A stretch of 30,461 nt of DNA, taken from Fonticula alba ATCC 38817 (taxonomy: Eukaryota > Protista > Nucleariida). The translations under genes and the position numbers were made by a program. Every line of letters begins with the position of its first letter. The first letter of the stretch is position 1. This document shows positions 1,213 through 30,461 of this stretch, piece by piece. The stretch lies in NCBI GenBank assembly GCA_000388065.2, contig KB932204.1. One strand, 5' to 3'. The notes beneath the pieces were generated by a model that saw only the letters and a list, made by a program, of their open reading frames with translations, was not told the DNA's origin and ran no database searches.

Positions 1213-4164
1213 ATGTCCGACCAGACCCCCACCCGTGCGACCTCTCCCCCTCCCTGCTCCTGCTCCTGCCCCTGCCCCTGCCCCTCTCGTCGTCTCTCCC
1301 GTCTCGTGTCTCGGGATCGGCCTGCCTCTGCCGCGCCTGCCCCGTCCCGCTGCTCACCTCCCGCTGCTCACCTCCCGCTGCTCGCGCGCGCCCACACGCA
1401 CACCACACACATATACGCATGTGCCCTCCCTCCTGCCTGTAGCCACCTTCCATGTCTGCGCCAAGGCCGGCTCCGACACCAACGCCGGCACCGCCGAGGC
1501 CCCCTTCAAGACCGTCGAGCATGCGCTGACCCTGAGCCCCGTGCGTCGTCCGGCGCCCGTCCTCCCGACCGCCGCATTGCCGCCTTGCCCCCACCCCCCG
1601 GCCACCTTGCCCCTGGCACTCACCACACAACCCCCTCCCACCCCCCCCGCTGTTCCTCCTCCGCCCGACAGACCGCCGAGGTCATGGAGATGTCCGAGGA
1701 GGGCGAGTTCAAGAAGAGTGCGCCCTCCACCCGCTCCTCCCTCATGATGCTGCCCACGCCGTCCCTCCCATGCCCCTCCCCCCCCCCCGGCGAAGCAGCG
1801 CCAGGCCCTGACCGACATGTCCCCTGCCCCCCTGCCCGTGTCCCCCTCGGGCCCAGTCTCCTCCAAGACCCGCTCTCGTGTCCTGAAGAACATCGAGAAG
1901 CAGGAGAAGCAGCGCCAGGCCGATGAGCTCCGCGTGCGTGTGCTCTTTTTTTTTCTTGGCTACACCCGCGTGCCTGCCCGACCCCCGCCTTTTTTTTGTT
2001 CCTCCACCTGACACACACACACACACCCCTGCGATCCACAGGCCAAGCAGCTCCAGGAGCGCCTCGAGGCCTCCAAGCTGGTCCAGATCGAGCGCCCCTC
2101 CGCCGATGAGACCACCTATGTGCGTGGGCCATGCTTCGCCCCTTTCCCCCTTTCTCCTCTCTNNNNNNNNNNNNNNNNNNNNNNNNNNNNNNNNNNNNNN
2201 NNNNNNNNNNNNNNNNNNNNNNNNNNNNNNNNNNNNNNNNNNNNNNNNNNNNNNNNNNNNNNNNNNNNNNNNNNNNNNNNNNNNNNNNNNNNNNNNNNNN
2301 NNNNNNNNNNNNNNNNNNNNNNNNNNNNNNNNNNNNNNNNNNNNNNNNNNNNNNNNNNNNNNNNNNNNNNNNNNNNNNNNNNNNNNNNNNNNNNNNNNNN
2401 NNNNNNNNNCTCTTCCGCACAAAAAAAAACAGATCAAGATCCGCGACGTCTGCGAGGAGAAGCCCGTCCCCGAGGGGATTGTCCTGATCAAGGGCTGGGT
2501 CCACCGCATTCGCATCCAGAGCAAGAAGCTCATGTTCGTCGTCGTCCGCGACGGCACCGGCCTGATGCAGTGCGTCCTCAACGATCAGCTGGTACGCGCG
2601 CACGCCGGCCCCTCCCCCCCCCCTCCTGGCGGGGGATGCCTGGCCCGGCCCTTCTTGCATGCACACCTGCCCCCTCGCGTTCCCCTTTTTGCGCACACTG
2701 ACACCCGGTCCCCGGCTCCCGCCCGCATCGCCAGTGCGAGACCTATGACGCCCTCACCCTCACTCGTGAGTCCACCGTCGAGGTGTACGGCACCCTGAAC
2801 CAGGTCCCCAAGGGCAAGACCGTGCGTGAGCCCGCCCGATGCCCCGATCATGTGCCCGGGCCGCCGCTAGATGCGCCCCGCCCGACCGCCGCCGCCGCCC
2901 TCTGACACGCCCCCCCCCCCCCCCACCCCCCACCCCCTTGCCAGTCCCCCAACGGCTTCGAGCTCAAGGCCGTCTTCTTCAAGATCATCTCCGCCGCCCC
3001 GGGTGGCAAGGACAGCGCCGACAACATCTTCAACGACGATGCCAACCCCGAGGTCCTCCTGGACCAGCGCCACATGGTCCTCCGTGACCAGGGCCCCTCG
3101 GACATCATGCGCTTCCGGGCCTTTGTCCTGAACGCCTTCCGCACCCACTACAACGACAACAACTACTGCGAGGTCACCCCCCCGCTCATGGTCCAGACCC
3201 AGGTCGAGGGTGGCTCCACCCTCTTCAAGTTCGATTACTACGGTCAGGATGTGCGCACGCCACCGGGTGGCCATCTCGCGCCGCTGCTCCCCCGCGCCCG
3301 CCCCCACTGCCTGGTCTAACCATCCCCGCCTCCCCCTCTCCCTCACCACGCACGCACACCGTCACACACCGTCACACACACACACACACACAGGCCTACC
3401 TCACCCAGTCGTCGCAGCTCTACCTGGAGACTGTCCTCCCCTCGCTGGGCGATGTCTACTGCATTGCGCAGTCCTTCCGCGCCGAGAAGTCCCGCACCCG
3501 CCGCCACCTGTCGGAGTACACCCACGTCGAGGCCGAGTGCTCCTTCATCAGCTTCGAGGACCTGCTCAACCGCGTGGAGAAGCTGGTTTGCGATGTGTCC
3601 AACCACATCTGGAACCACCCGGTCGCCGGGAAGATCCTGCGCGAGGTGAACCCCTCCTTCACCCCGCCCGAGGCCCCCTTCCTCCGGATGTCCTACATCG
3701 AGGGCATTGAGTGGCTCAACGAGCATGGCCAGCTCAAGCCCGATGGCACCCCCTATGTGTTTGGCGACGACATCCCCGAGGCTCCCGAGCGCTACATGAC
3801 CGACTCCATCAACCGGCCCATCCTCTTCCACTCCTTCCCGGCCGAGGTCAAGTCCTTCTACATGCCTCGTCGCGAGGAGGACAACCGCCTGACCGAGTCC
3901 GTGGACCTGCTGATGCCGGGTGTCGGCGAGATCGTCGGCGGGTCCATGCGTATCTGGGACCTGGAGGAGCTCATGAAGGGCTACGAGCGCGAGGGCATCG
4001 ACCCGACCCCGTACTACTGGTTCACCGACCAGCGCCGCTATGGCTCCTGCCCGCATGGTGGCTATGGTCTGGGCCTGGAGCGCTTCCTCACCTGGATGCT
4101 CGGCCTGCACCACGTCCGTGATGTCTGCCTGTACCCCCGCTTCACCGGCCGCTGCCGTCCTTGA
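1213..4164 (+). CDS. NARS1: Cytosolic asparaginyl-tRNA synthetase, 9 exons, 547 aa
   Basis: Exons 1213-1234, 1443-1540, 1672-1717, 1857-1933, 2042-2119, 2433-2591, 2735-2821, 2945-3250, 3394-4164 (1644 nt; all GT-AG, phases consistent). Motifs: eukaryotic N-terminal extension (GTAEAPFKT), OB fold ([23 protein letters not shown]), motif 1 ([17 protein letters not shown]), [12 protein letters not shown], motif 2 ([21 protein letters not shown]), motif 3 ([15 protein letters not shown]), C-terminus [13 protein letters not shown]. Confidence 0.97.
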
Positions 4165-5374: not shown

Positions 5375-7115
5375 CATGGTCAGGGACGCCAAGGGGGGTA
5401 GAGGGAGAGGCAGAGGGAGAAAGAAAGAAAGAAAAAGACGCAAGAGGCACGTACTCAACCCCATCCACAGAGAAGGCATAGGGGTTGGTGGTGGTGCTGA
5501 ACAGGGGCAGGCGGCGAGACCGGGGGAACACAAACCCGGGGAGGGGCTGCTGCGGATGCTGCATCGGTGTCGGGTCCCCATCGCCGGGCATCACATCCAC
5601 ATGCACACACTGGGCCAGCTGCGCGATGGCCAGGTCGGCCTGGGCCATCTGAGCGGCGGTGTGCTCCTCCTGCCGGCGAAGCTCCTCCCTCCGGCGCTGG
5701 TTCACGCGGCCGACATCCTGGTTGTCATAGTAGTCGGCCTGCTTGGAGAAGAGGTTGCCCGCAACAATCAGCCGGGTGATGTTCACCGGCGAGGGGACCC
5801 CAGGCTCCATGGGCCTCTTCGATGCCGAGGGGATCATTGACCCCAGCCCGCCCAGCTGATCCCCGGCCTCCTCGTCGGAGACCACTGCCTCCACGCGACC
5901 GGCCACCCAATCCACCAGCATGTCCAGCAGGGCCGCCGGCGTGCCGGCGGTCCCGGCCCCGAGGCTCCAATTGGAGGTGAGTGCCAGCAGGCTGTTGCCC
6001 GTATTCGAGGCCGACGGCAGGGGACGCTGTGGCGCCGGCAGCGGGAAGCAGATGTCCCGCACAAACAGCTCCCCGGGGATAAGCTGCACGCCGAGGATGG
6101 CGCAGACAACGCCTACACAGGGTGCCAGATGTGGGCATCCGCGCCCGGGGTGGAGTCAGCACCGGGAGGACGGGCAGAAATGCATGTGCATGCACATGTG
6201 TGCGCATGTGTGTATGGGAGGGAGAGAGAGAGAGAGAGAGGGGGGGGGGGGGGGGAGAAAATGTACGCCAGCTTGCCATCGGCAGAGGCCCACCACTCGC
6301 CACACCCAAAAGCCCAACGGGCACAGACAGGCACATGCACGCACCGGTAACCAGCATCTCTTGGAAGATCCGCGGGCCAGACAGGATCAGCCGTCCAGAC
6401 TCGTCCTCCAGCGCGAAGAAAGCCGGCCGCGGGGTAGCCCCCTTGGTGGGGGTCCCGAAGCTGGCCGGACGAGTGGCCGGATCCACGGGGCGGATATTTT
6501 GCTGGGAAACGAAAGAGGCGACCAGGCAAACGGTGTCAGGGCCCTGCACCACAGGGGGAGGCAAGTCGGTGACCATCCCACCGCGGGGGAGGAGAGGGCA
6601 GCGGCGACGGGGGGACATACCAAGCGCGACAGCTCATCAATGACATTCGGCTTGCCGGGCAGTTCGGCATAGATGACACCGCACACGACGGAGCGCTGTG
6701 CCGATGGGCGGTCGGTCGCGGTCAGGCCGAGCCAGGGGATCTTGCCCACCATGTGCTGGCTCGACTCCAGGGAGTTGTCGCCGAGCAGCGGCATATCCAG
6801 GACCTTGTCGACATGCTGGCTGGCCGGGATGTCGGGCCAGGCGGCCCGAGCGGCGGCCAACGCCCGCGGCTTCAGCCCCTCCAGCCGAGATTGGTAGATG
6901 CCGGAAAACTGGGCCGTGATGCCGTCAAGGCCGCTGCCACCGCCGGCCACCGCCGACGATGACGACGCCCGCTGCTTTGCCTCGGCATCCATGGCCATCA
7001 GCTCCGGCGACACCGGCTGGCCGAAAGAGGTGATGCGGAAGCCTTCGCCCAGGGCCGGGTCGAAGGTCACCTCCGGACGGGGCGTCCGGCCGCCGGGGCC
7101 GCAGGAGATGGTCAT
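4709..7115 (-). CDS. POLD2: DNA polymerase delta subunit 2 (Pol31/Cdc1/p50), 5 exons, about 614 aa
   Basis: Exons 7115-6621, 6543-6345, 6112-5455, 5327-5107, 4980-4709 (1845 nt). Motifs: QFSGIYQSRL, LEDESGRLIL, RLIVAGNL, VDVMPGDGDP..MQHPQQPL, TNPYAFSVDGVD|LVGISGQ, HWSPTAPDTL|PCFPF, PHVLFIGNQP. The start codon at 7115 is the most plausible one but is less certain than the internal exons. Confidence 0.93.
4997..5044. repeat. (GGCGAC)8 hexamer microsatellite in POLD2 intron 4
   Basis: Direct read of the sequence. Confidence 0.95.
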
Positions 7116-7554: not shown

Positions 7555-7868
7555 AATAACAGCCTCGCCAACTGCCAATGGTACAACAAGGTGCCGGTGA
7601 ATCGAGGACAATCTATTTCCCTCCCTGCGGGGGGAAGACAGGCCCCGCCAGGGGACGGGAGGGAGGGGGGGGNNNNNNNNNNNNNNNNNNNNNNNNNNNN
7701 NNTACAACTGCACAGGGACGTGTGCGCGCGCACACGCGCACGCATGCACACACGGGCACTGGGAGAGAAAGATGATTGGGTGCCCGGGAGGACAGGCGCC
7801 GCGCCGAAAGTTGCACACATCATGGGGGAGGAGCCCGCGAGAGGAGGGGACACGCCCATGGGGCCGGG

Positions 7869-11218: not shown

Positions 11219-12216
11219 GCTACTAGCAGCTGGAGTGCAGGCTGCCCTGCGACCCAGCTCGCAGCGAGGTCAGCCACCACAGGCCAAGTGGCTGGTGAGA
11301 AGTGGTCACTTCTGGGCGGGAGGTGAGACGGGCAGGGGAGGGGGCAGGGAACACCCTGCGGAAGGGGAGCAGCAAAGATGGGCGACAATAGGACGGGGGA
11401 GCAGGCAGCGCAGACAGGGTGCGGGGGGGGGNNNNNNNNNNNNNNNNNNNNNNNNNNNNNNNNNNNNNNNNNNNNNNNNNNNNNNNNNNNNNNNNNNNNN
11501 NNNNNNNNNNNNNNNNNNNNNNNNNNNNNNNNNNNNNNNNNNNNNNNNNNNNNNNNNNNNNNNNNNNNNNNNNNNNNNNNNNNNNNNNNNNNNNNNNNNN
11601 NNNNNNNNNNNNNNNNNNNNNNNNNNNNNNNNNNNNNNNNNNNNNNNNNNNNNNNNNNNNNNNNNNNNNNNNNNNNNNNNNNNNNNNNNNNNNNNNNNNN
11701 NNNNNNNNNNNNNNNNNNNNNNNNNNNNNNNNNNNNNNNNNNNNNNNNNNNNNNNNNNNNNNNNNNNNNNNNNNNNNNNNNNNNNNNNNNNNNNNNNNNN
11801 NNNNNNNNNNNNNNNNNNNNNNNNNNNNNNNNNNNNNNNNNNNNNNNNNNNNNNNNNNNNNNNNNNNNNNNNNNNNNNNNNNNNNNNNNNNNNNNNNNNN
11901 NNNNNNNNNNNNNNNNNNNNNNNNNNNNNNNNNNNNNNNNNNNNNNNNNNNNNNNNNNNNNNNNNNNNNNNNNNNNNNNNNNNNNNNNNNNNNNNNNNNN
12001 NNNNNNNNNNNNNNNNNNNNNNNNNNNNNNNNNNNNNNNNNNNNNNNNNNNNNNNNCCCCCCCCCTCTCCCCCTCCTCGGCAGCCGCAGGACCGGGCTTT
12101 TGACGAGGAGGCCTCCATCTCGCGAGCCGGGGCCGCCGGCATAGCGCACTCTCCCCGCCTCCTCCCTCTCGCGCACTTGGCTTTCCTGTCTTCGCTTCTC
12201 CGCAAATCCCGATACA

Positions 12217-13304: not shown

Positions 13305-13890
13305 CATATGCCTCCCCTTCGGGTGTCCGTGTGGCGAGGAGGGAAAAAGGTAAACCTCCGCCAAATAGATCCTTTACACGTATACACACACACACGCACA
13401 CGGCCACTGATGTCATGTTTGCCTTGCCCACGCACGCACCACTGGCACGAGACAAGCAGAAGGAGGGGGAGGGGAATGTATTTCGTGGAGTGCATGCACA
13501 CCTACATGTGACGGGGGGGGGGGGGGGGGGGGGGGGGGAAACGCAACGGGCACTTGCGTATTACCCGGTTTCACCCTCTCACGNNNNNNNNNNNNNNNNN
13601 NNNNNNNNNNNNNNNNNNNNNNNNNNNNNNNNNNNNNNNNNNNNNNNNNNNNNNNNNNNNNNNNNNNNNNNNNNNNNNNNNNNNNNNNNNNNNNNNNNNN
13701 NNNNNNNNNNNNNNNNNNNNNNNNNNNNNNNNNNNNNNNNNNNNNNNNNNNNNNNNNNNNNNNNNNNNNNNNNNNNNNNNNNNNNNNNNNNNNNNNNNNN
13801 NNNNNNNNNNNNNNNNNNNNNNNNNNNNNNNNNNNNNNNNCTCCCTCCTCCTTCGCCATGTCTCCATTCAGGGCGGGGGGGGGGAAGGAC

Positions 13891-16891
<3,001 letters not shown>

Positions 16892-22733: not shown

Positions 22734-23604
22734 GCGAAAGGGCACACGCGGTGTCCTCCCTTGCCGGGCTCTTTCCTCCAACATCCCCCTCTTCCCCCTC
22801 TCCAGCACGCATCTGCGCCACTCTTCCGCACATCCCGCTGTGTGTGCACGGCAGCGCGCGCGCATCTATCCCCTCGCCCCCTCCTCCGCGCCCTTGGCGT
22901 GTGTGTGTGTGTGTGACTGTGTATGCGCCTTTCTCCCGTGTGCTTGTGCGTCGTGTGCTCTTTGTGACCGTGTGTGCTGCGTGTCTTTGCCGCGCGTGTG
23001 CGTGTTTCCCCCCGAGAAAGAGACAGGGTGTGCCAGTTGTCGCCACACTCTCGTTCTCCCCCTCTCCCGCTCGCGTGCCCACCCGGCGCTGTTCTATATT
23101 CCCTCTCCTTCCTTCTCTCCCTCTCTCTCTTCCCCTCCCCCGCGCCCGGCTTTCCCCCCTCGGCGTGTGTGTGTGTGTCTGAGAAAGACCGAGAGTGCGC
23201 GTGCCTCGCCTCCAGAGCCCCCCGCCTCCGCTCTTCCATCTCTCTCTCTCCCTCTCTCCTGCTCTGGCTGTCGCGCGCCGCGCCTCTGCATGCTGATGCA
23301 TTCCCTGGCCTGCTGCCAGCTGCCTCCTCCTCCCGGTGGTGACACCGTTGTAAATATATTGTAGCCATGTTTATGTTTTGTCGTGTTGTTTTATTGCGTG
23401 TGTGTGTGTGTGTGTGTATGCACGCATTTCTTGTGTTAGCCCAGCGGGAGTGGGAAGGAGCCGCGTGTGGGTCTCTCCGCGGGAAGGCTCGGGTTCTGAT
23501 GGGGGAGACAGGGGGGACATGAGCGAGTGTGTGGGAGACGGCACAGGCGAGGGACAAGAGAAGGAGGCGGGAGAGGAAGGGGGAGAGAGCGGGAGATAGG
23601 CAAG

Positions 23605-23621
23605 CAGGCAGGCAGGCAGGC

Positions 23622-23688
<67 letters not shown>
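23605..23688. repeat. Compound tetranucleotide microsatellite (CAGG)4(CAGA)17 between the converging SUI1 and Caskin-like genes
   Basis: Direct read of the sequence. Confidence 0.92.
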
Positions 23689-23689
<1 letters not shown>

Positions 23690-24374
23690 GTGCGGACGGG
23701 CAGACGGACAGAGGCAAGGAAAGACAGCGCTGTTTCTGTGAAAGGTGGCCACCGCCACGCCAGGGGATCCACACACTTGATGGGAAGGAAAAAAAAAAAG
23801 GAAAGACCGTGCCGGCTGCAATTCACTTCTCCTTCCAAGGGGAGCAGGAGTGCGCGCACCCGGGATGCCGGCGCGCACACATATCCGCCCTTTTGATCTG
23901 AGGCATGGCCATCCGCGGAGGGCGCGCCGTTGTGAATGAGATTGTGTCTTGTATTTTTGAGGGGAAAAGGGAGGGGGAGAAACAATGGAGAACAAAAGGA
24001 GGGGGGGGGGGAGGCAACCGGCACGCCGACCCGCGAGGCCCGCGCGGCCCACACGGCCTGCGCCTGCCCCCTCTCCATGCTGCCACACGAGCACATATGG
24101 ACAGACGCACGCATGCGCACAAGCGCGCGCAAAGCAAAGCGCAACATCATTCAACGGTGGAGACGGGCGGGCACGGAGAGAGAGCGCACTCCTCCACCCA
24201 TCTTTCGCATGCACACCCAAGGGAGGGGGGGGGGGGACACACGCGCATCCATGCGTATGTGAACACACATGTGGGGGGAACATGTATCACCATGTGTGCA
24301 GGATATAGATGCACGGGGGACGACGCGCGCGTGTCACTGCATGCGTGTGTGTGTGTGTGTATGTGTGGAGGCCT

Positions 24375-27364
24375 TTAGAAGGACTGGATGACATCATTCA
24401 GATCATTGAACAGATCCTGCATGTCGTCCGGCACGGCACCGCCGATCGGCGGGGGGAGATCGATCGGCGACGAGGGGACCGACGAGCTGGCCGGCCCAAG
24501 GGGCGCCGGGGGCTTCGGCAAAGTGATCCCATTGTTGGTGATGGTGCCGCTGGTGCCGCCGCTGCTGCAGGGGGCCGAGTTGGAGCCGGCGGCCGCCTCG
24601 GCAGCCGAGGCCGCCGAGAAGCTGGCCGACCCGAAGCCCGCCGGCATGCCGTAGATGGATACCTGCGGCTTGCGGGGCAGGGCCGCCGAGGGAAGGGCAT
24701 CCCCAGCCGGGACGGTGGTGGCCGCCACGTCGCCGTACTGCCGGCGCAGGGACTCCACCTCCTCGGCCAGGTTCGACCGGTGATGGGCCAGGGTAATCCC
24801 CGGGACCAGGCGCGCCAGATCGGCCGCCGAGCGAATGGACGACAGGACATCCGCCGGAGAGGTCAGCCCAGCCGCATGGAAGGCGCCCACATAGCACTCC
24901 CAGTGGATGTCAAAGAGCCACTTGTCCACCCAGGGCCGGCCGTCTGGGCCGACCGCCGGCGGGAGGTTGGACGGGACAGCAGCGGCACCCGGGCGGGGCC
25001 CCGGCGGCGGGGGCAGTGTCGTGGCGGCGACCGTGTTCACACGCACGCCCTGTGCACCGAACGGGTCGGCAGGCATGTCGATATCTGAATCGGACGAGTC
25101 GGACTCGCTGCCGGAGTAGTCCGAGTCGTACTCGCTGCTGCTGGAGTAATCGCTGCCGGAGGAGTCGCTATGGCGCGAGGGGGCCCGAGAGGGGGCGGCG
25201 GCGGCCGCGGCCGCCGCCACCGGCGCCGGGGCCGAGATCGGGGCCGGGATCGGAGCCGAAGCCGTGGCCGCAACCAGCCGACTGGCGGCCGAAGTGGAGG
25301 AAGCAGGCGCGCCGGCCGCCAGCGGCTGCGGCGGCACCAGGCCAGCCATGCTGAGAGTTGGCTTCGGCGGGGCGGCGGTCAGCGGGGCAATGGCGGCAGG
25401 AGCACCGGCAGCAGGCTCATCGGCGACCTGCTGCTCCGCCTCATCTTCCTCCTCGTCGCCCTCCTCATACTCCTCGGTCACGTCGACCAGGTTGCACTTG
25501 AACTCGCCCACCTGGCCGGTGCGCAGGAGCCGGCCAACCCAAAGGCCACTGGGCCGGAAGTCGTGGACTTCGAATTCGTCGCCCTCCTCGAAGGAGAGAG
25601 CCAGGGCGTCATAGATGGAGCCAATGTGGCTCATGCGGGCCACCGCACGGCCGAGGACCTTGGGCTGCTTGGTGGCAGCCGGGGCCGCGGCCGCGGCCGC
25701 AGGGCTCGGCGAGGCAGCCGACATGGCCGGCCCCGGCCCCGTGGCCAGGGCACCCTCCGTGCCACTGGCATCCGACTGCGAGGCAATGGAGGCCGTGTCG
25801 GACAGAACACCGGCCGCCCCCGGGCCGAGAGGTGACAGGACCGCCGCCGGCGGGTCGGCACTCCCGACAGGGCGCCCGGGAGTGGACGGCCCGCCGCCAT
25901 CGGCCGATTGGCCGAGGCTGCCCATGGACGCCAGGGAGACGGAGCTGCTGGCGCTGCCAAGAGGACCGCCAGGCGCGGCGGCGGTGGCAGCAGCGGCGGC
26001 GGCCCCCGCCGAAGAGGCGGCCACCGGCGAAACGACGGCCGCCCCGGGAACAGCCTCGGCCTCCGGGTCGCGGACAATCGGCACAACGGTCGGCGCCAGG
26101 GACACACCAGCAGCGGCCAGGGCCGCCTCCGGGTCGACACCGCGCGTGGCCGAGGACAGCAGAATGAACGACCGGTTCTCCTTCAGCCGGTTGGTTGTGG
26201 CACACAGAATCTGGATGGGGGTCAGCTGGCCGCGGTTCTTGGCATGGATGTCTGCCCCGCGAGACAGCAGCAGGGCCACGACCGCGTGCTTGCCGCGCTC
26301 GGTGGCATAGTGCAGGGCCGTGGACCCGATGTGGCTCATGGCATTGACATCGACCCCGCCATCGAGGAGGACCGCCACGCAGTCCGCATGCCCGCCACTG
26401 GCGGCCAGATGCAACGGCGACCGGGGCGGCGGCTGCGACGGGTTGGCATACACCTTGTCCAGGACCTCCTTGGTGGCCAGCAGCCGGAGGATGGCATCCT
26501 TGCCGTACTCGGCCGACAGGTCGAGCGGCGTCTGCCCGGCGCGATTCTGCAAGAGGGGGCTGGCCCCGGCGGCCATCAGCAGCTGGGCCGAGTCGGCCGA
26601 CCGGTTGAACTGGGCCGCCAGATGCAGCGGCGAGCACTGGTCATTGTTCAGCCCGTCCACGGGGACCCCGGCTTCCAGGAGAACGCGCACGCATTCCGGG
26701 TGGTTCCCCCACGCGGCGTAATGGAGAGCCGTGTTGCCTGTGGAGCCGTCAAGCAGGAGGGAGGCCAGGATGGGAGGGGGGGGGGGAGGGGGGCGGAATC
26801 GGGTCAGAGGGCGATCAGAGGAGGACGACACAGCCACACATGCGGGGGAGCCCAGGCGAGGGAAGGAGAGAGAGAGAGGGAAGTGGCGGAGAAACCGGCG
26901 CACCAGTGCGATCAACGATGTCCACACGCGCGCCAAGATCAATGGCTCGACGGAGGTACTCCGCATAGCCGGACGTGGCGGCCACATGCAAGATGGTCAT
27001 GCTGTCATCGTTGATGGTGTTGATGTCGACATCCCGGCGGAAGACCTTGGACAGGACGCCGGTCATTCGCCCGGCCGCACCGCCGGCCTTGGTCTTCGAC
27101 GAGTCATCCACCCGGCGCTCGGGGATCAGCTCATTCAGGAGAGACAGGTTGCCCTGCGAGGCGGAGCTGAAGAGCTCGTCATCCTTTTTCATCCGCTATG
27201 TGCATGCGCGTTGAGATGTGGGATGTGAGTGTGAGTGTGTGTGTGTGTGTGTGTGCGCGCGCGCGCGCGCGCGCAGAGGTGTGACATTGGGGAGGCAGGG
27301 ACACATGCAGGAGGAGGCATCGGCAGGGGGGTGGCCCTCGGACACGTACGGATCTCGAGGACAT
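24375..27364 (-). CDS. Caskin/ANKS1-like scaffold: six ankyrin repeats, SH3, one SAM and a Caskin-tail-like C-terminal helix, about 889 aa
   Basis: Exons 27364-27350 (MSSRS, preceded by an in-frame TAG), 27195-26904, 26737-24375 (2670 nt). Ankyrin repeats: ILHVAA, ALHYAAW, PLHLAAQ, TPLDLSAEYG, SPLHLAA, TALHYA. SH3 about 25660-25479; SAM about 24932-24745; C-terminus DDMQDLFNDLNDVIQSF. Confidence 0.85.
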
Positions 27365-27817: not shown

Positions 27818-30461
27818 CTAGCCAGGGGTGTGCGTGTGTGTGCGTGTGTGTGGCTTCCCCGGGGGCGCGCGCGATAGGGCGAGGTCGGAGGCGGGCGTCC
27901 GACGGAGGGTGTGAGGGGTGACGAGACGAGAGGGAGAGCGACGAGGGGGTAGAGGGGGGGGGGCCGAAAGTGGAGGGCAGGGGGGTGTGGGAGGGGAAGA
28001 AGATGGCGGCGCTGAGGGCGGCGATCTCCCGGCGGNNNNNNNNNNNNNNNNNNNNNNNNNNNNNNNNNNNNNNNNNNNNNNNNNNNNNNNNNNNNNNNNN
28101 NNNNNNNNNNNNNNNNNNNNNNNNNNNNNNNNNNNNNNNNNNNNNNNNNNNNNNNNNNNNNNNNNNNNNNNNNNNNNNNNNNNNNNNNNNNNNNNNNNNN
28201 NNNNNNNNNNNNNNNNNNNNNNNNNNNNNNNNNNNNNNNNNNNNNNNNNNNNNNNNNNNNNNNNNNNNNNNNNNCCCCCTCGCCCCCGGAGAGAGTCGGG
28301 TGCGCGGGGTGAGGGACGCATGTGCCCTCCACACCTGGGGGGGGCAATATTACACCAATCAAGGTCCCCGTGCAAACAGAGGCGGCCGACGCGTCTGCCC
28401 GGTGGTGGTGGTGGTGGTGGTGGTGGCGGCGGTGGTGATGGCCAGCCTCGCAGGCTCTTTTCTCGGCGCCTTCGCCCCGCCTCCCCCCTCGGAGCATGGG
28501 CATGCCCCCCTTGGGCGGGGCCACCGCGTCGGCCCGCAGCCGGGCTGGGCGAGCGCGGAGGGGCCGAGGGGCCTGGGGGGGGCTTTCAACCGCTCGAAGG
28601 GCCCGAGCCGGGCTTCACAGGAGCAGCCCCTCTCCCCCGTGCAATGTGCGGGGGCGCTCGCGCGGGGAGGTTCGGCCCAGCATGCATCAGCCGCGGCGCC
28701 CGGAGAATGCCCGATTTGATACCCCCTGCTGCGCGGCAAGAGCTTTGGGGCCCCCGAGGGAAAGGGGCTCGCCGGCGCCTTGCAAGATCTTTGCCCGGCG
28801 GCCCGCCCAACATGAGAGGGCGATGCCCTCTCGCAAGGTTGCCCGCGCGCGCGCGCGCGCGCGTGTGTGTATTTATCCCCGAGAGGTCTCCCCTCCACGG
28901 TCAGGGGAGCCAACGTGCCTTGGGGGGCGGGGGGGTTGCGTGCCGGCCGCCATCAACATCCCGGCACGCGGGGGCGCTCGGTCGGGCCGGGCGCCGTGTC
29001 CGCCGGCGCGACCGAGGGTGCCCCGATTCCGGGCCTCGAACATGCCCGCGGTGCCCCAGGGGCTTGTGCGTGCGCTGCCCGCTTCCTGCGTGTCTCTTTC
29101 TCCCTCTCTCCCTCTCTTGTGCCTCTCGCAAGGCATTCCTCCCCGGGGGCGGTGGGCGCCGTCCGCCCGCCCTCCCCCCCTCCCTTCTGGCCAGACCACC
29201 GAGGACCGTGTGCGTGTATCTTGGAGGCCTTGATCCCGAGGACGCCGGGGTCGTGGCTTTGTACTCGACCGCCTGGCCCCCCGCGCCCAGCCCCCTCCCC
29301 CCCCGGAGGACGGGATGCCTTCCGGCCCGCACACACAATGGCCCGTAGATGAGCCCCTTCGCGGGGGTGTGGGGAAAAAACCGGCAGACCATCAGCCCCC
29401 CCCCCCCGGGGCAGGGCAGCTGGCACATCTCACACAGCGTGCGCCGGTATCCCCCCCCCCCCTCCCGCCCGCCCACCGGTGCAGGCGCGTACCCGTGTAG
29501 CGCGCCGTTCGCGGCCCGGGGGCAGGGAGGCGGGTCTCTCAGGCTGGGGAGGGGGGCGGCGGCAGCGGGGCATTTTGCGCGGCGGTGGTGCGGGCGGAGG
29601 TGTTCTTTGTTTGTATCACAGCCTGCCGGCCAGTGCCCAGCTTTGGCGAGCTGGCCGTCTCGGCGCCCGGGCGTGCGCGCACCCCACATTGGCCCTCTCG
29701 CGCCGGCGGTGAAAACGCGTCATATCGCCAGTGAGCTCCCTGTCGATGGCTGGCGAAAGGCCCCCCCCCCCCCGGGTACCACCAGTGCGGCAGGCCTCCG
29801 GGAGCGTGGCCGGCTTTTCGGCCGCCCCGGTGCGTGTGAGCCCCCCCCCCCCCCCAACGGGGGGAGGTAGTGTGAGGGCCGTCTGATGCGCCGAGCGAAC
29901 GCCGAGGGTATGCTTGCGGCAGCGCCCGGCGCAGTCCGGCAATTTATGGCCCCCGCCCGTGTGCGCCAGACACATGTGCGGGCGGGGGCCGAGTCGCTGG
30001 GACGGCAGCGCCTCCCCGGCCGCCTCCCCCCCCCCCCCGGCCTCTCTCCGGCAGCCACCCCTGGGTGGGCATTTTTTCAGGTACCCCATCGGGTAAGGCC
30101 CTTGGCCTTTGGGGCGAACCTTCCCCTGCGAGCTGGGGAGGGTGCGGGGGCAGGCACGCGCAAGCACAGACCTGTCCCTCCCCCTGCCCCTCCGCCGGGG
30201 GGGGGGGGGAACGGCTAGCGGCTTCCCCCCCGCGCACCCACACAATAATAAACTTGAGGCCCTCACGCAACCCCCGAGGGCGCGTGTCTGTGTGTGCGCA
30301 TTCACCCCGCCGCGTCTGCGTCTCGGCCGTTCACCTTCTCGAGCGAGCAATGGACCGACGCGGTACATGGGGAGCCGAGGCCGTCAAACACCGGCGGGAG
30401 CCTGCGCAGTCGGTGGTCAAGCGCCGGCACGCCGCCCCGCCTACGGGGAGCGGGGGGGGGG

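What the first reader, a model, noticed from the sequence alone, without database searches (positions are those of the whole stretch)
24375..27364. Caskin-like synaptic-scaffold architecture in what appears to be a unicellular eukaryote
The ankyrin module matches human CASKIN/ANKS1 repeat by repeat as recalled: KDDELF ~ KEQELV, LHYAAW, PLHLAAQ, G.TPLDL..E.G, a spacer, SPLHLAA..GH, TALH.A...GK..VV.LLL. It is followed by SH3, a Pro/Ser-rich region and SAM. The C-terminus DDMQDLFNDLNDVIQSF mirrors the Caskin tail (DDIGSMFDDLADQLDAML). Caskins are usually described as animal neuronal scaffolds (CASK, LAR-RPTP, Nck/Dock binding). Only one SAM is present, versus tandem SAMs in animals, and I see no CASK-binding EEIWVLR-type motif. 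This may represent the pre-metazoan, pre-CASK state of the family. The host lineage is inferred, not known.
Basis: partly seen in the sequence, partly recalled or inferred. Interest (0 to 1): 0.75.

Follow-up and report, generated by a model that had tools for sequence, protein, structure and literature searches.

The report
Caskin-like scaffold gene in Fonticula alba
The slime-mould-like amoeba Fonticula alba, a relative of fungi, carries a real gene built like the animal scaffold protein Caskin, including a tail resembling the one that binds talin in human Caskin2, so this family probably predates animals and synapses.

Summary
Window 24375-27364 (minus strand) is the three-exon coding sequence of Fonticula alba H696_02622, an 889-aa "hypothetical protein".

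- **Ankyrin block.** It is specifically of the Caskin/ANKS1 type. Caskins give the best single-stretch scores (130-134 bits, next 89.5). Trout Caskin-2 finds this gene as its best Fonticula match (107.6 bits, next 48.2). A tree puts it with Caskin and ANKS1 against generic ankyrin proteins (94/88).
- **SH3 and SAM.** Both are real, but neither is Caskin-specific. The SH3 is closest to SASH1/SAMSN1 and Crk. The SAM belongs to the Eph/Caskin/ANKS1 group.
- **Absent.** There is no second SAM, no CASK-binding motif, and no L27 or PTB domain in the genome.
- **Tail.** It fails Pfam's Caskin-tail model but beats nearly all shuffles against Caskin tails.
- **Relatives.** I found ANK-SH3-SAM-tail genes on metagenome contigs of about six unidentified eukaryotes. 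One tail matches 11 of 18 aligned residues of the Caskin-1 tail. Three lineages share an intron position and phase with Fonticula.

In human Caskin2 this tail is an LD motif that binds talin R8, and Fonticula has talin with an R7R8 module. Whether the family is nearer Caskin or ANKS1 is unresolved (AU p 0.21). I found no published report of Caskin outside animals.

The parts
24375..27364 (-). Whole coding region of Fonticula alba H696_02622 (889 aa), three exons
   Evidence: Exact match to P0001. Junctions with GT..AG reproduce the protein.
27350..27364 (-). Exon 1, a mini-exon coding MSSRS
   Evidence: An in-frame ATG also opens exon 2, so the true start is not settled.
27196..27349 (-). Intron 1 (154 nt, GT..AG), containing a (CA)n run
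26904..27195 (-). Exon 2: N-terminal cap (KKDDELF... motif) and the first ankyrin repeat
   Evidence: Pfam Ank_5/Ank_4. Aligns with the Caskin N-terminus and with the N-terminal exons of relatives.
26738..26903 (-). Intron 2 (166 nt), phase 1 inside the Gly codon of T-G-N-T. Same position and phase in relatives L002, L013 and L036.
26145..26737 (-). Ankyrin repeats 2-6 with the ten-residue spacer before repeat 5; Caskin/ANKS1-type block
   Evidence: Pfam Ank 106 bits. Best single-stretch scores to Caskins are 133.6 and 129.9 bits, next 89.5. Family HMM and tree.
25659..26144 (-). Linker 1, Ala/Ser/Gly/Pro-rich and about 160 residues. Absent in Caskin, where SH3 follows the ankyrin block directly.
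   Evidence: Composition. Alignment with Caskin.
25470..25658 (-). SH3 domain, atypical: the canonical second Tyr of ALYDY, and the Pro and Tyr of the canonical FPSNYV motif, are replaced
   Evidence: Pfam SH3_1 E 0.002. PDB matches: SAMSN1 E 6e-4, SASH1 E 1e-3, Caskin-2 E 0.17. Five-strand model with all top fold matches SH3. Family alignment.
24942..25469 (-). Linker 2: an acidic stretch, then an Ala/Pro/Ser-rich region with PxxP sites and a Ser/Asp run
24732..24941 (-). Single SAM domain of the Eph/Caskin/ANKS1 type
   Evidence: Pfam SAM_1 E 0.036. EphB2 E 0.005. Family profile against PDB: Caskin-1 SAM1 47.9 bits, EphA7 57.5 bits.
24435..24731 (-). Linker 3, Ala/Pro/Ser/Gly-rich with PxxP sites
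24378..24434 (-). C-terminal acidic amphipathic motif (DDMQDLFNDLNDVIQSF), a candidate LD motif
   Evidence: Shuffle tests against Caskin tails. Predicted helix with block-mean pLDDT 68-75. Homologous tails in relatives. Function of the Caskin2 counterpart from PMC11166458.

Best explanation
This is an expressed-type, intron-bearing Fonticula alba gene for a non-enzymatic adaptor of the Caskin/ANKS1 superfamily. Its order is N-terminal cap, six ankyrin repeats, an atypical SH3, one Eph/Caskin-type SAM, proline-rich linkers, and a C-terminal acidic amphipathic helix homologous to the Caskin tail. It belongs to a family that also occurs in several uncultured eukaryotes. It most likely reflects the architecture from which animal Caskin (second SAM and CASK-binding motif added) and perhaps ANKS1 (SH3 lost, PTB gained) derive.

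Likely mechanism, which is inferred and not shown: the ankyrin block and the SH3 dock partners, the SAM self-associates or binds other SAM domains, the PxxP linkers recruit SH3 proteins, and the C-terminal LD-type helix packs onto a talin rod bundle (R8). That would tie the scaffold to adhesion and the actin cytoskeleton of the amoeba. It does not work through CASK.
For: **Ankyrin block**
- Collinear 247-residue alignment with CASKIN1, E 3e-38.
- Among the 119 other proteins listed by the first search, the two Caskins have the best single-stretch scores: 133.6 and 129.9 bits, next 89.5.
- A five-member family HMM scores Caskins 139-162 and ANKS1 115-150, against 105 or less for generic ankyrin proteins, over 322 proteins.
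- Reciprocal search: trout Caskin-2 against the whole Fonticula genome hits this gene at 107.6 bits, next 48.2.
- The three nearest ESM Atlas clusters are caskin-2-like, scores 0.96, 0.94 and 0.94.
- Tree: Fonticula plus metagenome relatives 96/90. This clade together with Caskin and ANKS1 against generic proteins 94/88.

**SH3 and SAM**
- SH3 fold confirmed.
- SAM profile finds Caskin-1/2 and ANKS1B tandem SAMs and Eph SAMs.

**Tail**
- Fonticula against Caskin-1: 9 of 20000 shuffles reach the observed score.
- The tail of relative L036 is identical to the Caskin-1 tail at 11 of 18 aligned positions. It is the top hit to the Caskin-1 tail among 940,498 six-frame residues, scoring 52 against 37 for the best unrelated stretch.

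**Relatives with the same architecture:** L002, L009/L018, L020/L036 and L001.

**Shared intron:** a phase-1 intron at the same Gly codon in Fonticula, L002, L013 and L036.

**Partner and absent parts**
- The human Caskin2 tail is an LD motif that binds talin R8, Kd about 2.7 uM, with a crystal structure (PMC11166458).
- Fonticula has talin (Talin_middle 130.7 bits) with an R7R8 module (139 bits to 2x0c/5fzt).
- No CID motif, no L27 and no PTB domain were found.
Against: - Pfam Caskin-tail (PF16632) finds nothing in the protein, the genome or the relatives' tails. A small HMM of family tails does not reach Caskin either.
- The SH3 is nearer SASH1/SAMSN1 and Crk than Caskin: 50 and 44 bits against 18-21 bits with the family HMM, and the Caskin-1 SH3 ranks about 48th in PDB.
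- On single-domain scores EphA7, SAMD5 and EphB1 SAMs equal or beat Caskin SAM1.
- There is only one SAM, and a linker of about 160 residues separates the ankyrin block from the SH3.
- Of the four Caskin2 residues that contact talin, Fonticula keeps F and L-to-I. The first is Pro and the last lies beyond its C-terminus.
- The exhaustive search with the C-terminal half found no Caskin at E 0.001 or better.
- No invertebrate or unicellular-holozoan Caskin was available for the tree, and the position relative to Caskin and ANKS1 is unresolved.
- No binding, expression or localisation data exist for this protein.
Confidence: 0.72

Rival explanations
1. Convergent domain shuffling. A consensus-like six-repeat ankyrin block happened to be joined to an SH3 and a SAM, and the likeness to Caskin is what any near-consensus ankyrin protein would show.
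For: By summed score, generic multi-repeat ankyrin proteins outrank Caskin. The SH3 and SAM are not Caskin-specific. Pfam's Caskin-specific models all fail.
Against: The single-stretch score gap. The reciprocal best hit. The shared spacer and N-terminal KE-EL motif. The tree. The tail at the same terminal position, strongly Caskin-like in relative L036. The embedding search.
Confidence: 0.08
2. The SH3-SAM part is a SASH1/SLY-type cassette, so the protein is better seen as a relative of SASH1/SAMSN1 that carries an ankyrin block, or as a mosaic of two lineages.
For: The best natural SH3 matches are SAMSN1 and SASH1. The only significant database-wide hits of the C-terminal half, apart from family fragments and one six-SH3 protein, are SASH1-like SH3+SAM proteins P0123 and P0125, E 1e-5 and 8e-4. 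They share the G-x-F-K signature.
Against: The family SAM scores 3.4 bits or less on those proteins' SAMs, against 45 bits on Caskin-2 SAM1. In PDB, SASH1 SAMs score 37.5 and 25.7 bits, below Caskin and Eph. No SLY domain appeared in the Pfam scan. The ankyrin block and the tail have no counterpart in SASH1.
Confidence: 0.1
3. The gene is the counterpart of ANKS1 (Odin/AIDA-1) rather than of Caskin.
For: The AU test does not reject family plus ANKS1-like as one clade (p 0.21). ANKS1B scores 150 bits with the family HMM, within the Caskin range. The Atlas structure search lists an ANKS1B cluster first.
Against: ANKS1 has no SH3 and no LD tail, and has tandem SAMs plus a PTB. This gene has an SH3 and the Caskin-like tail, and no PTB domain was found anywhere in the genome. 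For Fonticula itself, Caskins score 104-112 bits and ANKS1 60-76 bits.
Confidence: 0.08
4. Animal contamination or a recent transfer from an animal into the assembly.
For: None beyond the animal-like best named hits.
Against: The gene lies on a 3.07-Mb Fonticula scaffold. Its GC content, about 68-73%, is that of its surroundings. It is only 34-38% identical to animal proteins. It groups with non-identical relatives of other base compositions.
Confidence: 0.02

Closest known systems
Caskin-1 / Caskin-2 (animal CASK-interacting proteins; Drosophila Ckn)
   Same: An N-terminal K-E-x-E-L motif and six ankyrin repeats in the same register, with the same spacer before repeat 5. Then an atypical SH3, an Eph-type SAM, long proline-rich disordered regions, and an acidic amphipathic LD-type helix at the very C-terminus (domain description in PMC11166458 and PMC5020537).
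   Different: One SAM instead of two. No CASK-interaction motif. About 160 residues between the ankyrin block and the SH3. An SH3 closer to SASH1/Crk. The tail is too short or divergent for Pfam PF16632. The host is not an animal and appears to lack CASK (no L27 domain found).
ANKS1A/ANKS1B (Odin, AIDA-1)
   Same: A paralogous six-repeat ankyrin block (115-150 bits with the family HMM) and a SAM of the same subgroup.
   Different: ANKS1 has tandem SAMs and a C-terminal PTB, with no SH3 and no LD tail. The Fonticula genome shows no PTB domain.
SASH1 / SAMSN1 / SASH3 (SLY family)
   Same: An SH3 followed by a SAM. The SH3 is the closest natural match and shares the G-x-F-K signature.
   Different: No ankyrin block, no Caskin-like tail, and SAM domains less similar than those of Caskin or Eph. 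No SLY domain here.
LD-motif talin ligands (DLC1, RIAM, KANK, paxillin)
   Same: A short acidic amphipathic helix with spaced Leu/Phe/Ile residues. The relatives also carry an internal L-D-D-L-L-x-D-L type motif after the SAM.
   Different: Those proteins are otherwise unrelated. Binding of the Fonticula motif to anything is untested.

Membership tests
Caskin | N-terminal six-repeat ankyrin block of the Caskin/ANKS1 type | tested here: met
   Collinear alignment, E 3e-38. Best single-stretch scores. Reciprocal best hit in the genome. Tree 94/88 against generic ankyrins.
Caskin | Atypical SH3 following the ankyrin block | tested here: inconclusive
   An SH3 is present and atypical. It sits about 160 residues downstream and resembles SASH1/Crk SH3s more than Caskin's.
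Caskin | Tandem SAM domains (SAM1-SAM2) | tested here: not met
   One SAM only (Pfam; family SAM HMM gives a single hit at residues 702-768). Relatives also have one SAM, or none in L013.
Caskin | CASK-interaction domain (EEIWVLR motif; Caskin-1) | tested here: not met
   No motif by pattern search. PF16600 has no hit in this gene. No L27 domain in the genome.
Caskin | Long proline-rich region | tested here: inconclusive
   The linkers are Ala/Pro/Ser-rich with 16 PxxP sites and one PxxPxR. Composition alone is weak evidence, and Pfam Caskin-Pro-rich gave no hit.
Caskin | Conserved C-terminal domain with a talin-binding LD motif | tested here: inconclusive
   Pfam PF16632 is negative. Motif-level similarity is positive by shuffles and by position, and strongly so in relative L036. 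Binding is untested.
ANKS1A/B | Tandem SAM domains plus a C-terminal PTB (PID) domain | tested here: not met
   One SAM. No PID match in the protein or the genome, although the control genomes did not ring either.
SASH1/SLY | SLY domain preceding an SH3-SAM cassette; no ankyrin repeats | tested here: not met
   No SLY family in the Pfam scan at E up to 1. An ankyrin block is present. Only the SH3 is SASH1-like.

The most novel reading that the evidence does not exclude
An ANK-SH3-SAM-LD adaptor that binds talin through its C-terminal helix existed before the split of the animal and fungal lines, and possibly earlier. Caskin and ANKS1 are its animal descendants, so the Caskin-talin link is older than CASK binding and older than synapses. 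Fonticula and several uncultured amoeboid eukaryotes would still use it to couple adhesion to the cytoskeleton.
Probability: 0.4. Interest if true: 0.7.

Novelty: new variant of a known kind. Interest (0 to 1): 0.55.

Why it matters
Caskins are treated as animal neuronal scaffolds. A clear relative in Holomycota moves the origin of the family to at least the opisthokont ancestor, and sister genes exist in several unidentified microbial eukaryotes.

The conserved parts are the ankyrin block, one SAM and the LD tail. CASK binding and the second SAM then look like later animal additions. This gives a testable idea about the ancestral job: talin and cytoskeleton coupling, which fits the recent non-neuronal Caskin2 work.

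It also names a "hypothetical protein" and defines a previously unlabelled family in metagenomes.

Tried and rejected
1. Pfam's Caskin-tail, Caskin1-CID and Pro-rich models, run on the protein, its pieces, the six-frame genome and the relatives' tails, were all negative.
2. Word-based protein searches with exon 3 and with a family profile were swamped by multi-repeat ankyrin proteins. They gave no named full-length orthologue. I ranked by best single stretch instead.
3. The MAFFT alignment of exon pieces to the full protein misplaced the tails and SAM pieces, so those rows were dropped.
4. The AlphaFold model of SAM plus tail had mean pLDDT 48 and was not used for a fold search.
5. A small HMM of family tails did not reach Caskin, or even Fonticula when Fonticula was left out.
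6. The genome search with dingo Caskin-1 failed twice. Trout Caskin-2 worked.
7. Naming the organisms behind the relatives did not succeed. The cluster look-up carried no names. The thiocyanate-bioreactor samples are reported to hold a rotifer, a rhizarian and a Fonticula relative (PMC5880246), but I could not assign the contigs. The AT-rich ones could be from the rotifer, so the clade cannot be called purely protist.
8. A synteny check upstream of the gene found no Pfam domains.
9. An exact look-up of P0001 on other assemblies found nothing on record.
10. Abi (Abi_HHR) was not found in the genome, but the controls did not ring either.
11. Spliced models of the relatives were not joined. All searches used exon pieces by reference, and the Fonticula full length was taken from database entry P0001.
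Full report
**What is at the coordinates.**
The window is GC-rich (about 66-73% around the gene) and carries six N gaps. On the minus strand, 24375-27364 holds a three-exon coding sequence. The exons are 27364-27350, 27195-26904 and 26737-24375, with GT..AG introns of 154 and 166 nt. Joined, they reproduce a public protein letter for letter: P0001, "hypothetical protein H696_02622 [Fonticula alba]", 889 aa, on a 3.07-Mb scaffold. Fonticula alba is an opisthokont of the order Rotosphaerida, so it is not an animal.

**Domains.**
- Pfam finds strong ankyrin repeats (Ank 106 bits) in exon 3 and one more in exon 2.
- The SH3 is below Pfam's cut-off (18 bits, E 0.002). It is real all the same. It matches solved SH3 domains (SAMSN1 E 6e-4, SASH1 E 1e-3, Caskin-2 E 0.17). 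A single-sequence AlphaFold model (mean pLDDT 63) has five strands, and its 50 best fold matches are all SH3 domains.
- The SAM is weak alone (SAM_1 E 0.036; EphB2 E 0.005) but clear once relatives are added (see the section on SH3 and SAM below).
- There is one SAM only. There is no EEIWVLR-type motif, whereas both Caskins used for comparison have one. Pfam's Caskin1-CID, Caskin-tail and Pro-rich models give nothing in this gene.
- The linkers are Ala/Pro/Ser/Gly-rich with 16 PxxP sites.

**Is the ankyrin block specifically Caskin-like?**
By summed score any long ankyrin protein outranks Caskin, so I ranked by the best single stretch.
- Among the 119 other proteins listed by the first search, the two Caskins lead with 133.6 and 129.9 bits over the whole block. 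The next protein scores 89.5.
- BLASTP against dingo CASKIN1 is collinear over 247 residues with 34% identity, 8 gap positions and E 3e-38. The alignment includes the spacer before repeat 5.
- In reverse, trout Caskin-2 searched against the whole Fonticula genome hits this exon at 107.6 bits, with the next place at 48.2.
- The protein-language-model search independently lists three caskin-2-like clusters first, scores 0.96, 0.94 and 0.94.

**Relatives.**
An exhaustive HMMER search with the C-terminal half (SH3 to the end) found only five proteins, all through the SH3. They were two short fragments, two SASH1-like SH3+SAM proteins and one six-SH3 protein. No Caskin was among them.

The fragments led to eukaryotic metagenome contigs on which a prokaryotic gene caller had split one gene into its exons. 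L002 (GC 26%) carries an N-terminal cap, the ankyrin block, SH3, SAM and a last exon with an acidic tail. Further searches added more contigs:
- L013 (GC 28%; ANK, SH3 and tail, no SAM seen)
- L009/L018 (GC 66-69%; full architecture)
- L005 and L011 (GC 66-67%; the contigs end after the ankyrin block)
- L020/L036 (GC 54-55%; full architecture)
- L001 (GC 42%; SH3, SAM and tail)

The Fonticula block is 38-43% identical to theirs, with the same spacer. Fonticula, L002, L013 and L036 share an intron at the same place and phase, between the first and second base of the Gly codon before N-T/S-x-L-H.

I could not name these organisms. Contigs L012 and L015 carry a sample label (KANT15-1) that I take, without confirming it, to mean the thiocyanate-bioreactor study of Kantor et al. 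2015. Those samples are reported to contain a rotifer, a rhizarian and a Fonticula relative (PMC5880246). An animal origin of the AT-rich contigs is therefore not excluded. The spliced models of these relatives were not joined, and every search used exon pieces by reference.

**Placement.**
An HMM of five family ankyrin blocks scores family members 219-319 bits, Caskins 139-162, ANKS1 proteins 115-150, and generic ankyrin proteins 105 or less (322 proteins).

A maximum-likelihood tree of 37 blocks gives these branches:
- Fonticula plus the metagenome genes as one clade (96/90)
- vertebrate Caskins (100/100)
- an ANKS1-like clade (98/95)
- the three together against 16 generic outgroups (94/88)

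The free tree puts the family sister to Caskin plus ANKS1 (87/74). AU tests reject neither family plus Caskin nor family plus ANKS1 (both p 0.21). No invertebrate Caskin was available. So membership of the Caskin/ANKS1 superfamily is well supported, but the position inside it is open.

**SH3 and SAM are not Caskin-specific.**
- With a family SH3 profile, SASH1-like proteins score 50 and 44 bits and Caskins 18-21. In PDB the best are CrkL (50.4), SAMSN1 (46.0) and SASH1 (42.1), and the Caskin-1 SH3 scores 28.5.
- The family SH3 lacks the second Tyr of ALYDY and has Lys where canonical SH3s have the Pro of the FPSNYV motif. It is probably not a standard PxxP binder, as has been reported for Caskin SH3s (PMC5020537, PMC7830187). 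This point is an inference.
- The family SAM profile puts the Caskin-1 and Caskin-2 tandem SAMs on top by summed score (82.8 and 77.5 bits), then ANKS1B (66.7). On single domains, EphA7 (57.5), SAMD5 (50.8) and EphB1 (49.5) equal or beat Caskin SAM1 (47.9). It is a SAM of the Eph/Caskin/ANKS1 group and no more can be said.

**The tail.**
- Fonticula's last 25 residues, compared with the last 30 of Caskin-1, score 42 (BLOSUM62). Only 9 of 20000 shuffles reach that score, and 30 of 20000 for Caskin-2. In each protein the best position for the other's tail is the extreme C-terminus.
- The relatives' tails are clearly homologous to one another: 0 of 5000 shuffles reach their scores.
- The L036 tail is identical to the Caskin-1 tail at 11 of 18 aligned positions and ends at the same distance from the stop. 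Against 940,498 six-frame residues it is the top match to the Caskin-1 tail, scoring 52, while the best unrelated stretch scores 37. Eight of the nine best hits are the tail-bearing last exons of family genes.
- Pfam's 63-position Caskin-tail model still finds none of them, and a small tail HMM fails too. The link therefore rests on short-motif statistics and on position.
- The relatives also carry an internal L-D-D-L-L-x-D-L type motif after the SAM. I did not see it in Fonticula.

**Mechanism.**
In human Caskin2 the last 20 residues are an LD motif that binds talin R8. This was shown by a crystal structure, a Kd of about 2.7 uM, and loss of binding when L1183, F1190, L1197 and L1201 are replaced. 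The proline-rich region binds the Abi1 SH3 (PMC11166458).
- Fonticula keeps the Phe and has Ile for L1197. It has Pro at the first position, and the protein ends before the last. L036 has hydrophobic residues at all four positions.
- Fonticula has a talin gene (Talin_middle 130.7 bits in a 2415-residue open frame). Its rod aligns over the whole R7R8 module of solved talin-1 structures (139 bits, E 2e-39).
- Abi was not detected, but that search was uninformative.
- No L27 domain (the domain found in CASK and Veli) and no PTB domain were found in the genome.

My reading is a non-enzymatic adaptor that couples partners of its ankyrin block and SH3, through SAM-mediated assembly, to talin by way of the terminal helix. 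All of the binding steps are inferred.

**Known or new.**
The protein is public but unnamed. In the held literature no paper mentions Caskin together with Fonticula. The three papers that mention Caskin together with choanoflagellates do not appear to address its origin: I read the Caskin passages of only one of them, and a wider term search surfaced no paper that mentions Caskin.

I file it as a new variant of a known kind. It has the Caskin/ANKS1 ankyrin block and a Caskin-like tail, but a single SAM, no CASK-binding motif and an SH3 of another flavour, in a non-animal. Interest is moderate. It extends a supposedly animal scaffold family to the fungal side of the opisthokonts, and it suggests that talin coupling, not CASK binding, is the old function.

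Noticed in passing
L002:1980-4277; L013:706-3072; L018:1-2825; L036:3311-6363; L001:3-1395; L005:3605-4486; L011:2923-4024: A previously unlabelled eukaryotic gene family (ANK block, SH3, SAM, internal LD-like motif, proline-rich region, acidic C-terminal helix) on metagenome contigs with GC from 25% to 69%. A prokaryotic gene caller had split each gene into separate 'proteins'. The organisms are unknown.
   Followed up: partly
L013:2032-3072: The L013-type gene comes from the same samples as L002 and has similar base composition. It has the ankyrin block, SH3, LD-like motif and tail, but no SAM domain was found. It may be a paralogue in the same organism.
   Followed up: partly
L002:3957-4010; L013:2515-2570; L001:892-950; L036 about 5800-5850: An internal paxillin-like LD motif (of the type L-D-D-L-L-x-D-L) sits shortly after the SAM domain in the relatives. 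No clear counterpart was seen in Fonticula.
   Followed up: no
L005:1480-1890, L006:167-1821, L007:571-1107, L011:1004-2647: A ubiquitin hydrolase (UCH) gene lies upstream of the ankyrin gene and is transcribed divergently from it, in two GC-rich lineages. This is conserved gene order. No such domain was found upstream in the Fonticula window.
   Followed up: partly
P0072 residues 366-372: The trout protein named Caskin-2 carries an E-D-I-W-V-L-R motif of the CASK-binding type, although mammalian Caskin2 is described as lacking a CASK-interaction domain (PMC4994250).
   Followed up: no
G000:C5:913728-914216 (L096:4229-4717, open frame of about 2415 residues): Fonticula alba has a talin gene whose rod aligns with the whole R7R8 module of solved talin-1 structures.
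   Followed up: partly
window 27230-27290 and 23540-23650: A (CA)n/(GC)n run lies inside intron 1. A (CTGT)n-type microsatellite lies downstream of the gene, where the translated frames read repeated SVCL and DRQT.
   Followed up: no
window 25908-27014 (+), 25609-26637 (-), 24309-25088 (+): Long open frames of 259-368 codons overlap the gene in other frames and on the other strand. They have no family matches and are what a 70% GC coding region gives by chance.
   Followed up: partly
window 2163-2409, 7673-7702, 11432-12056, 13584-13840, 16409-16743, 28036-28274: Six assembly gaps (runs of N), one of them 670 bases upstream of the gene's start codon.
   Followed up: no
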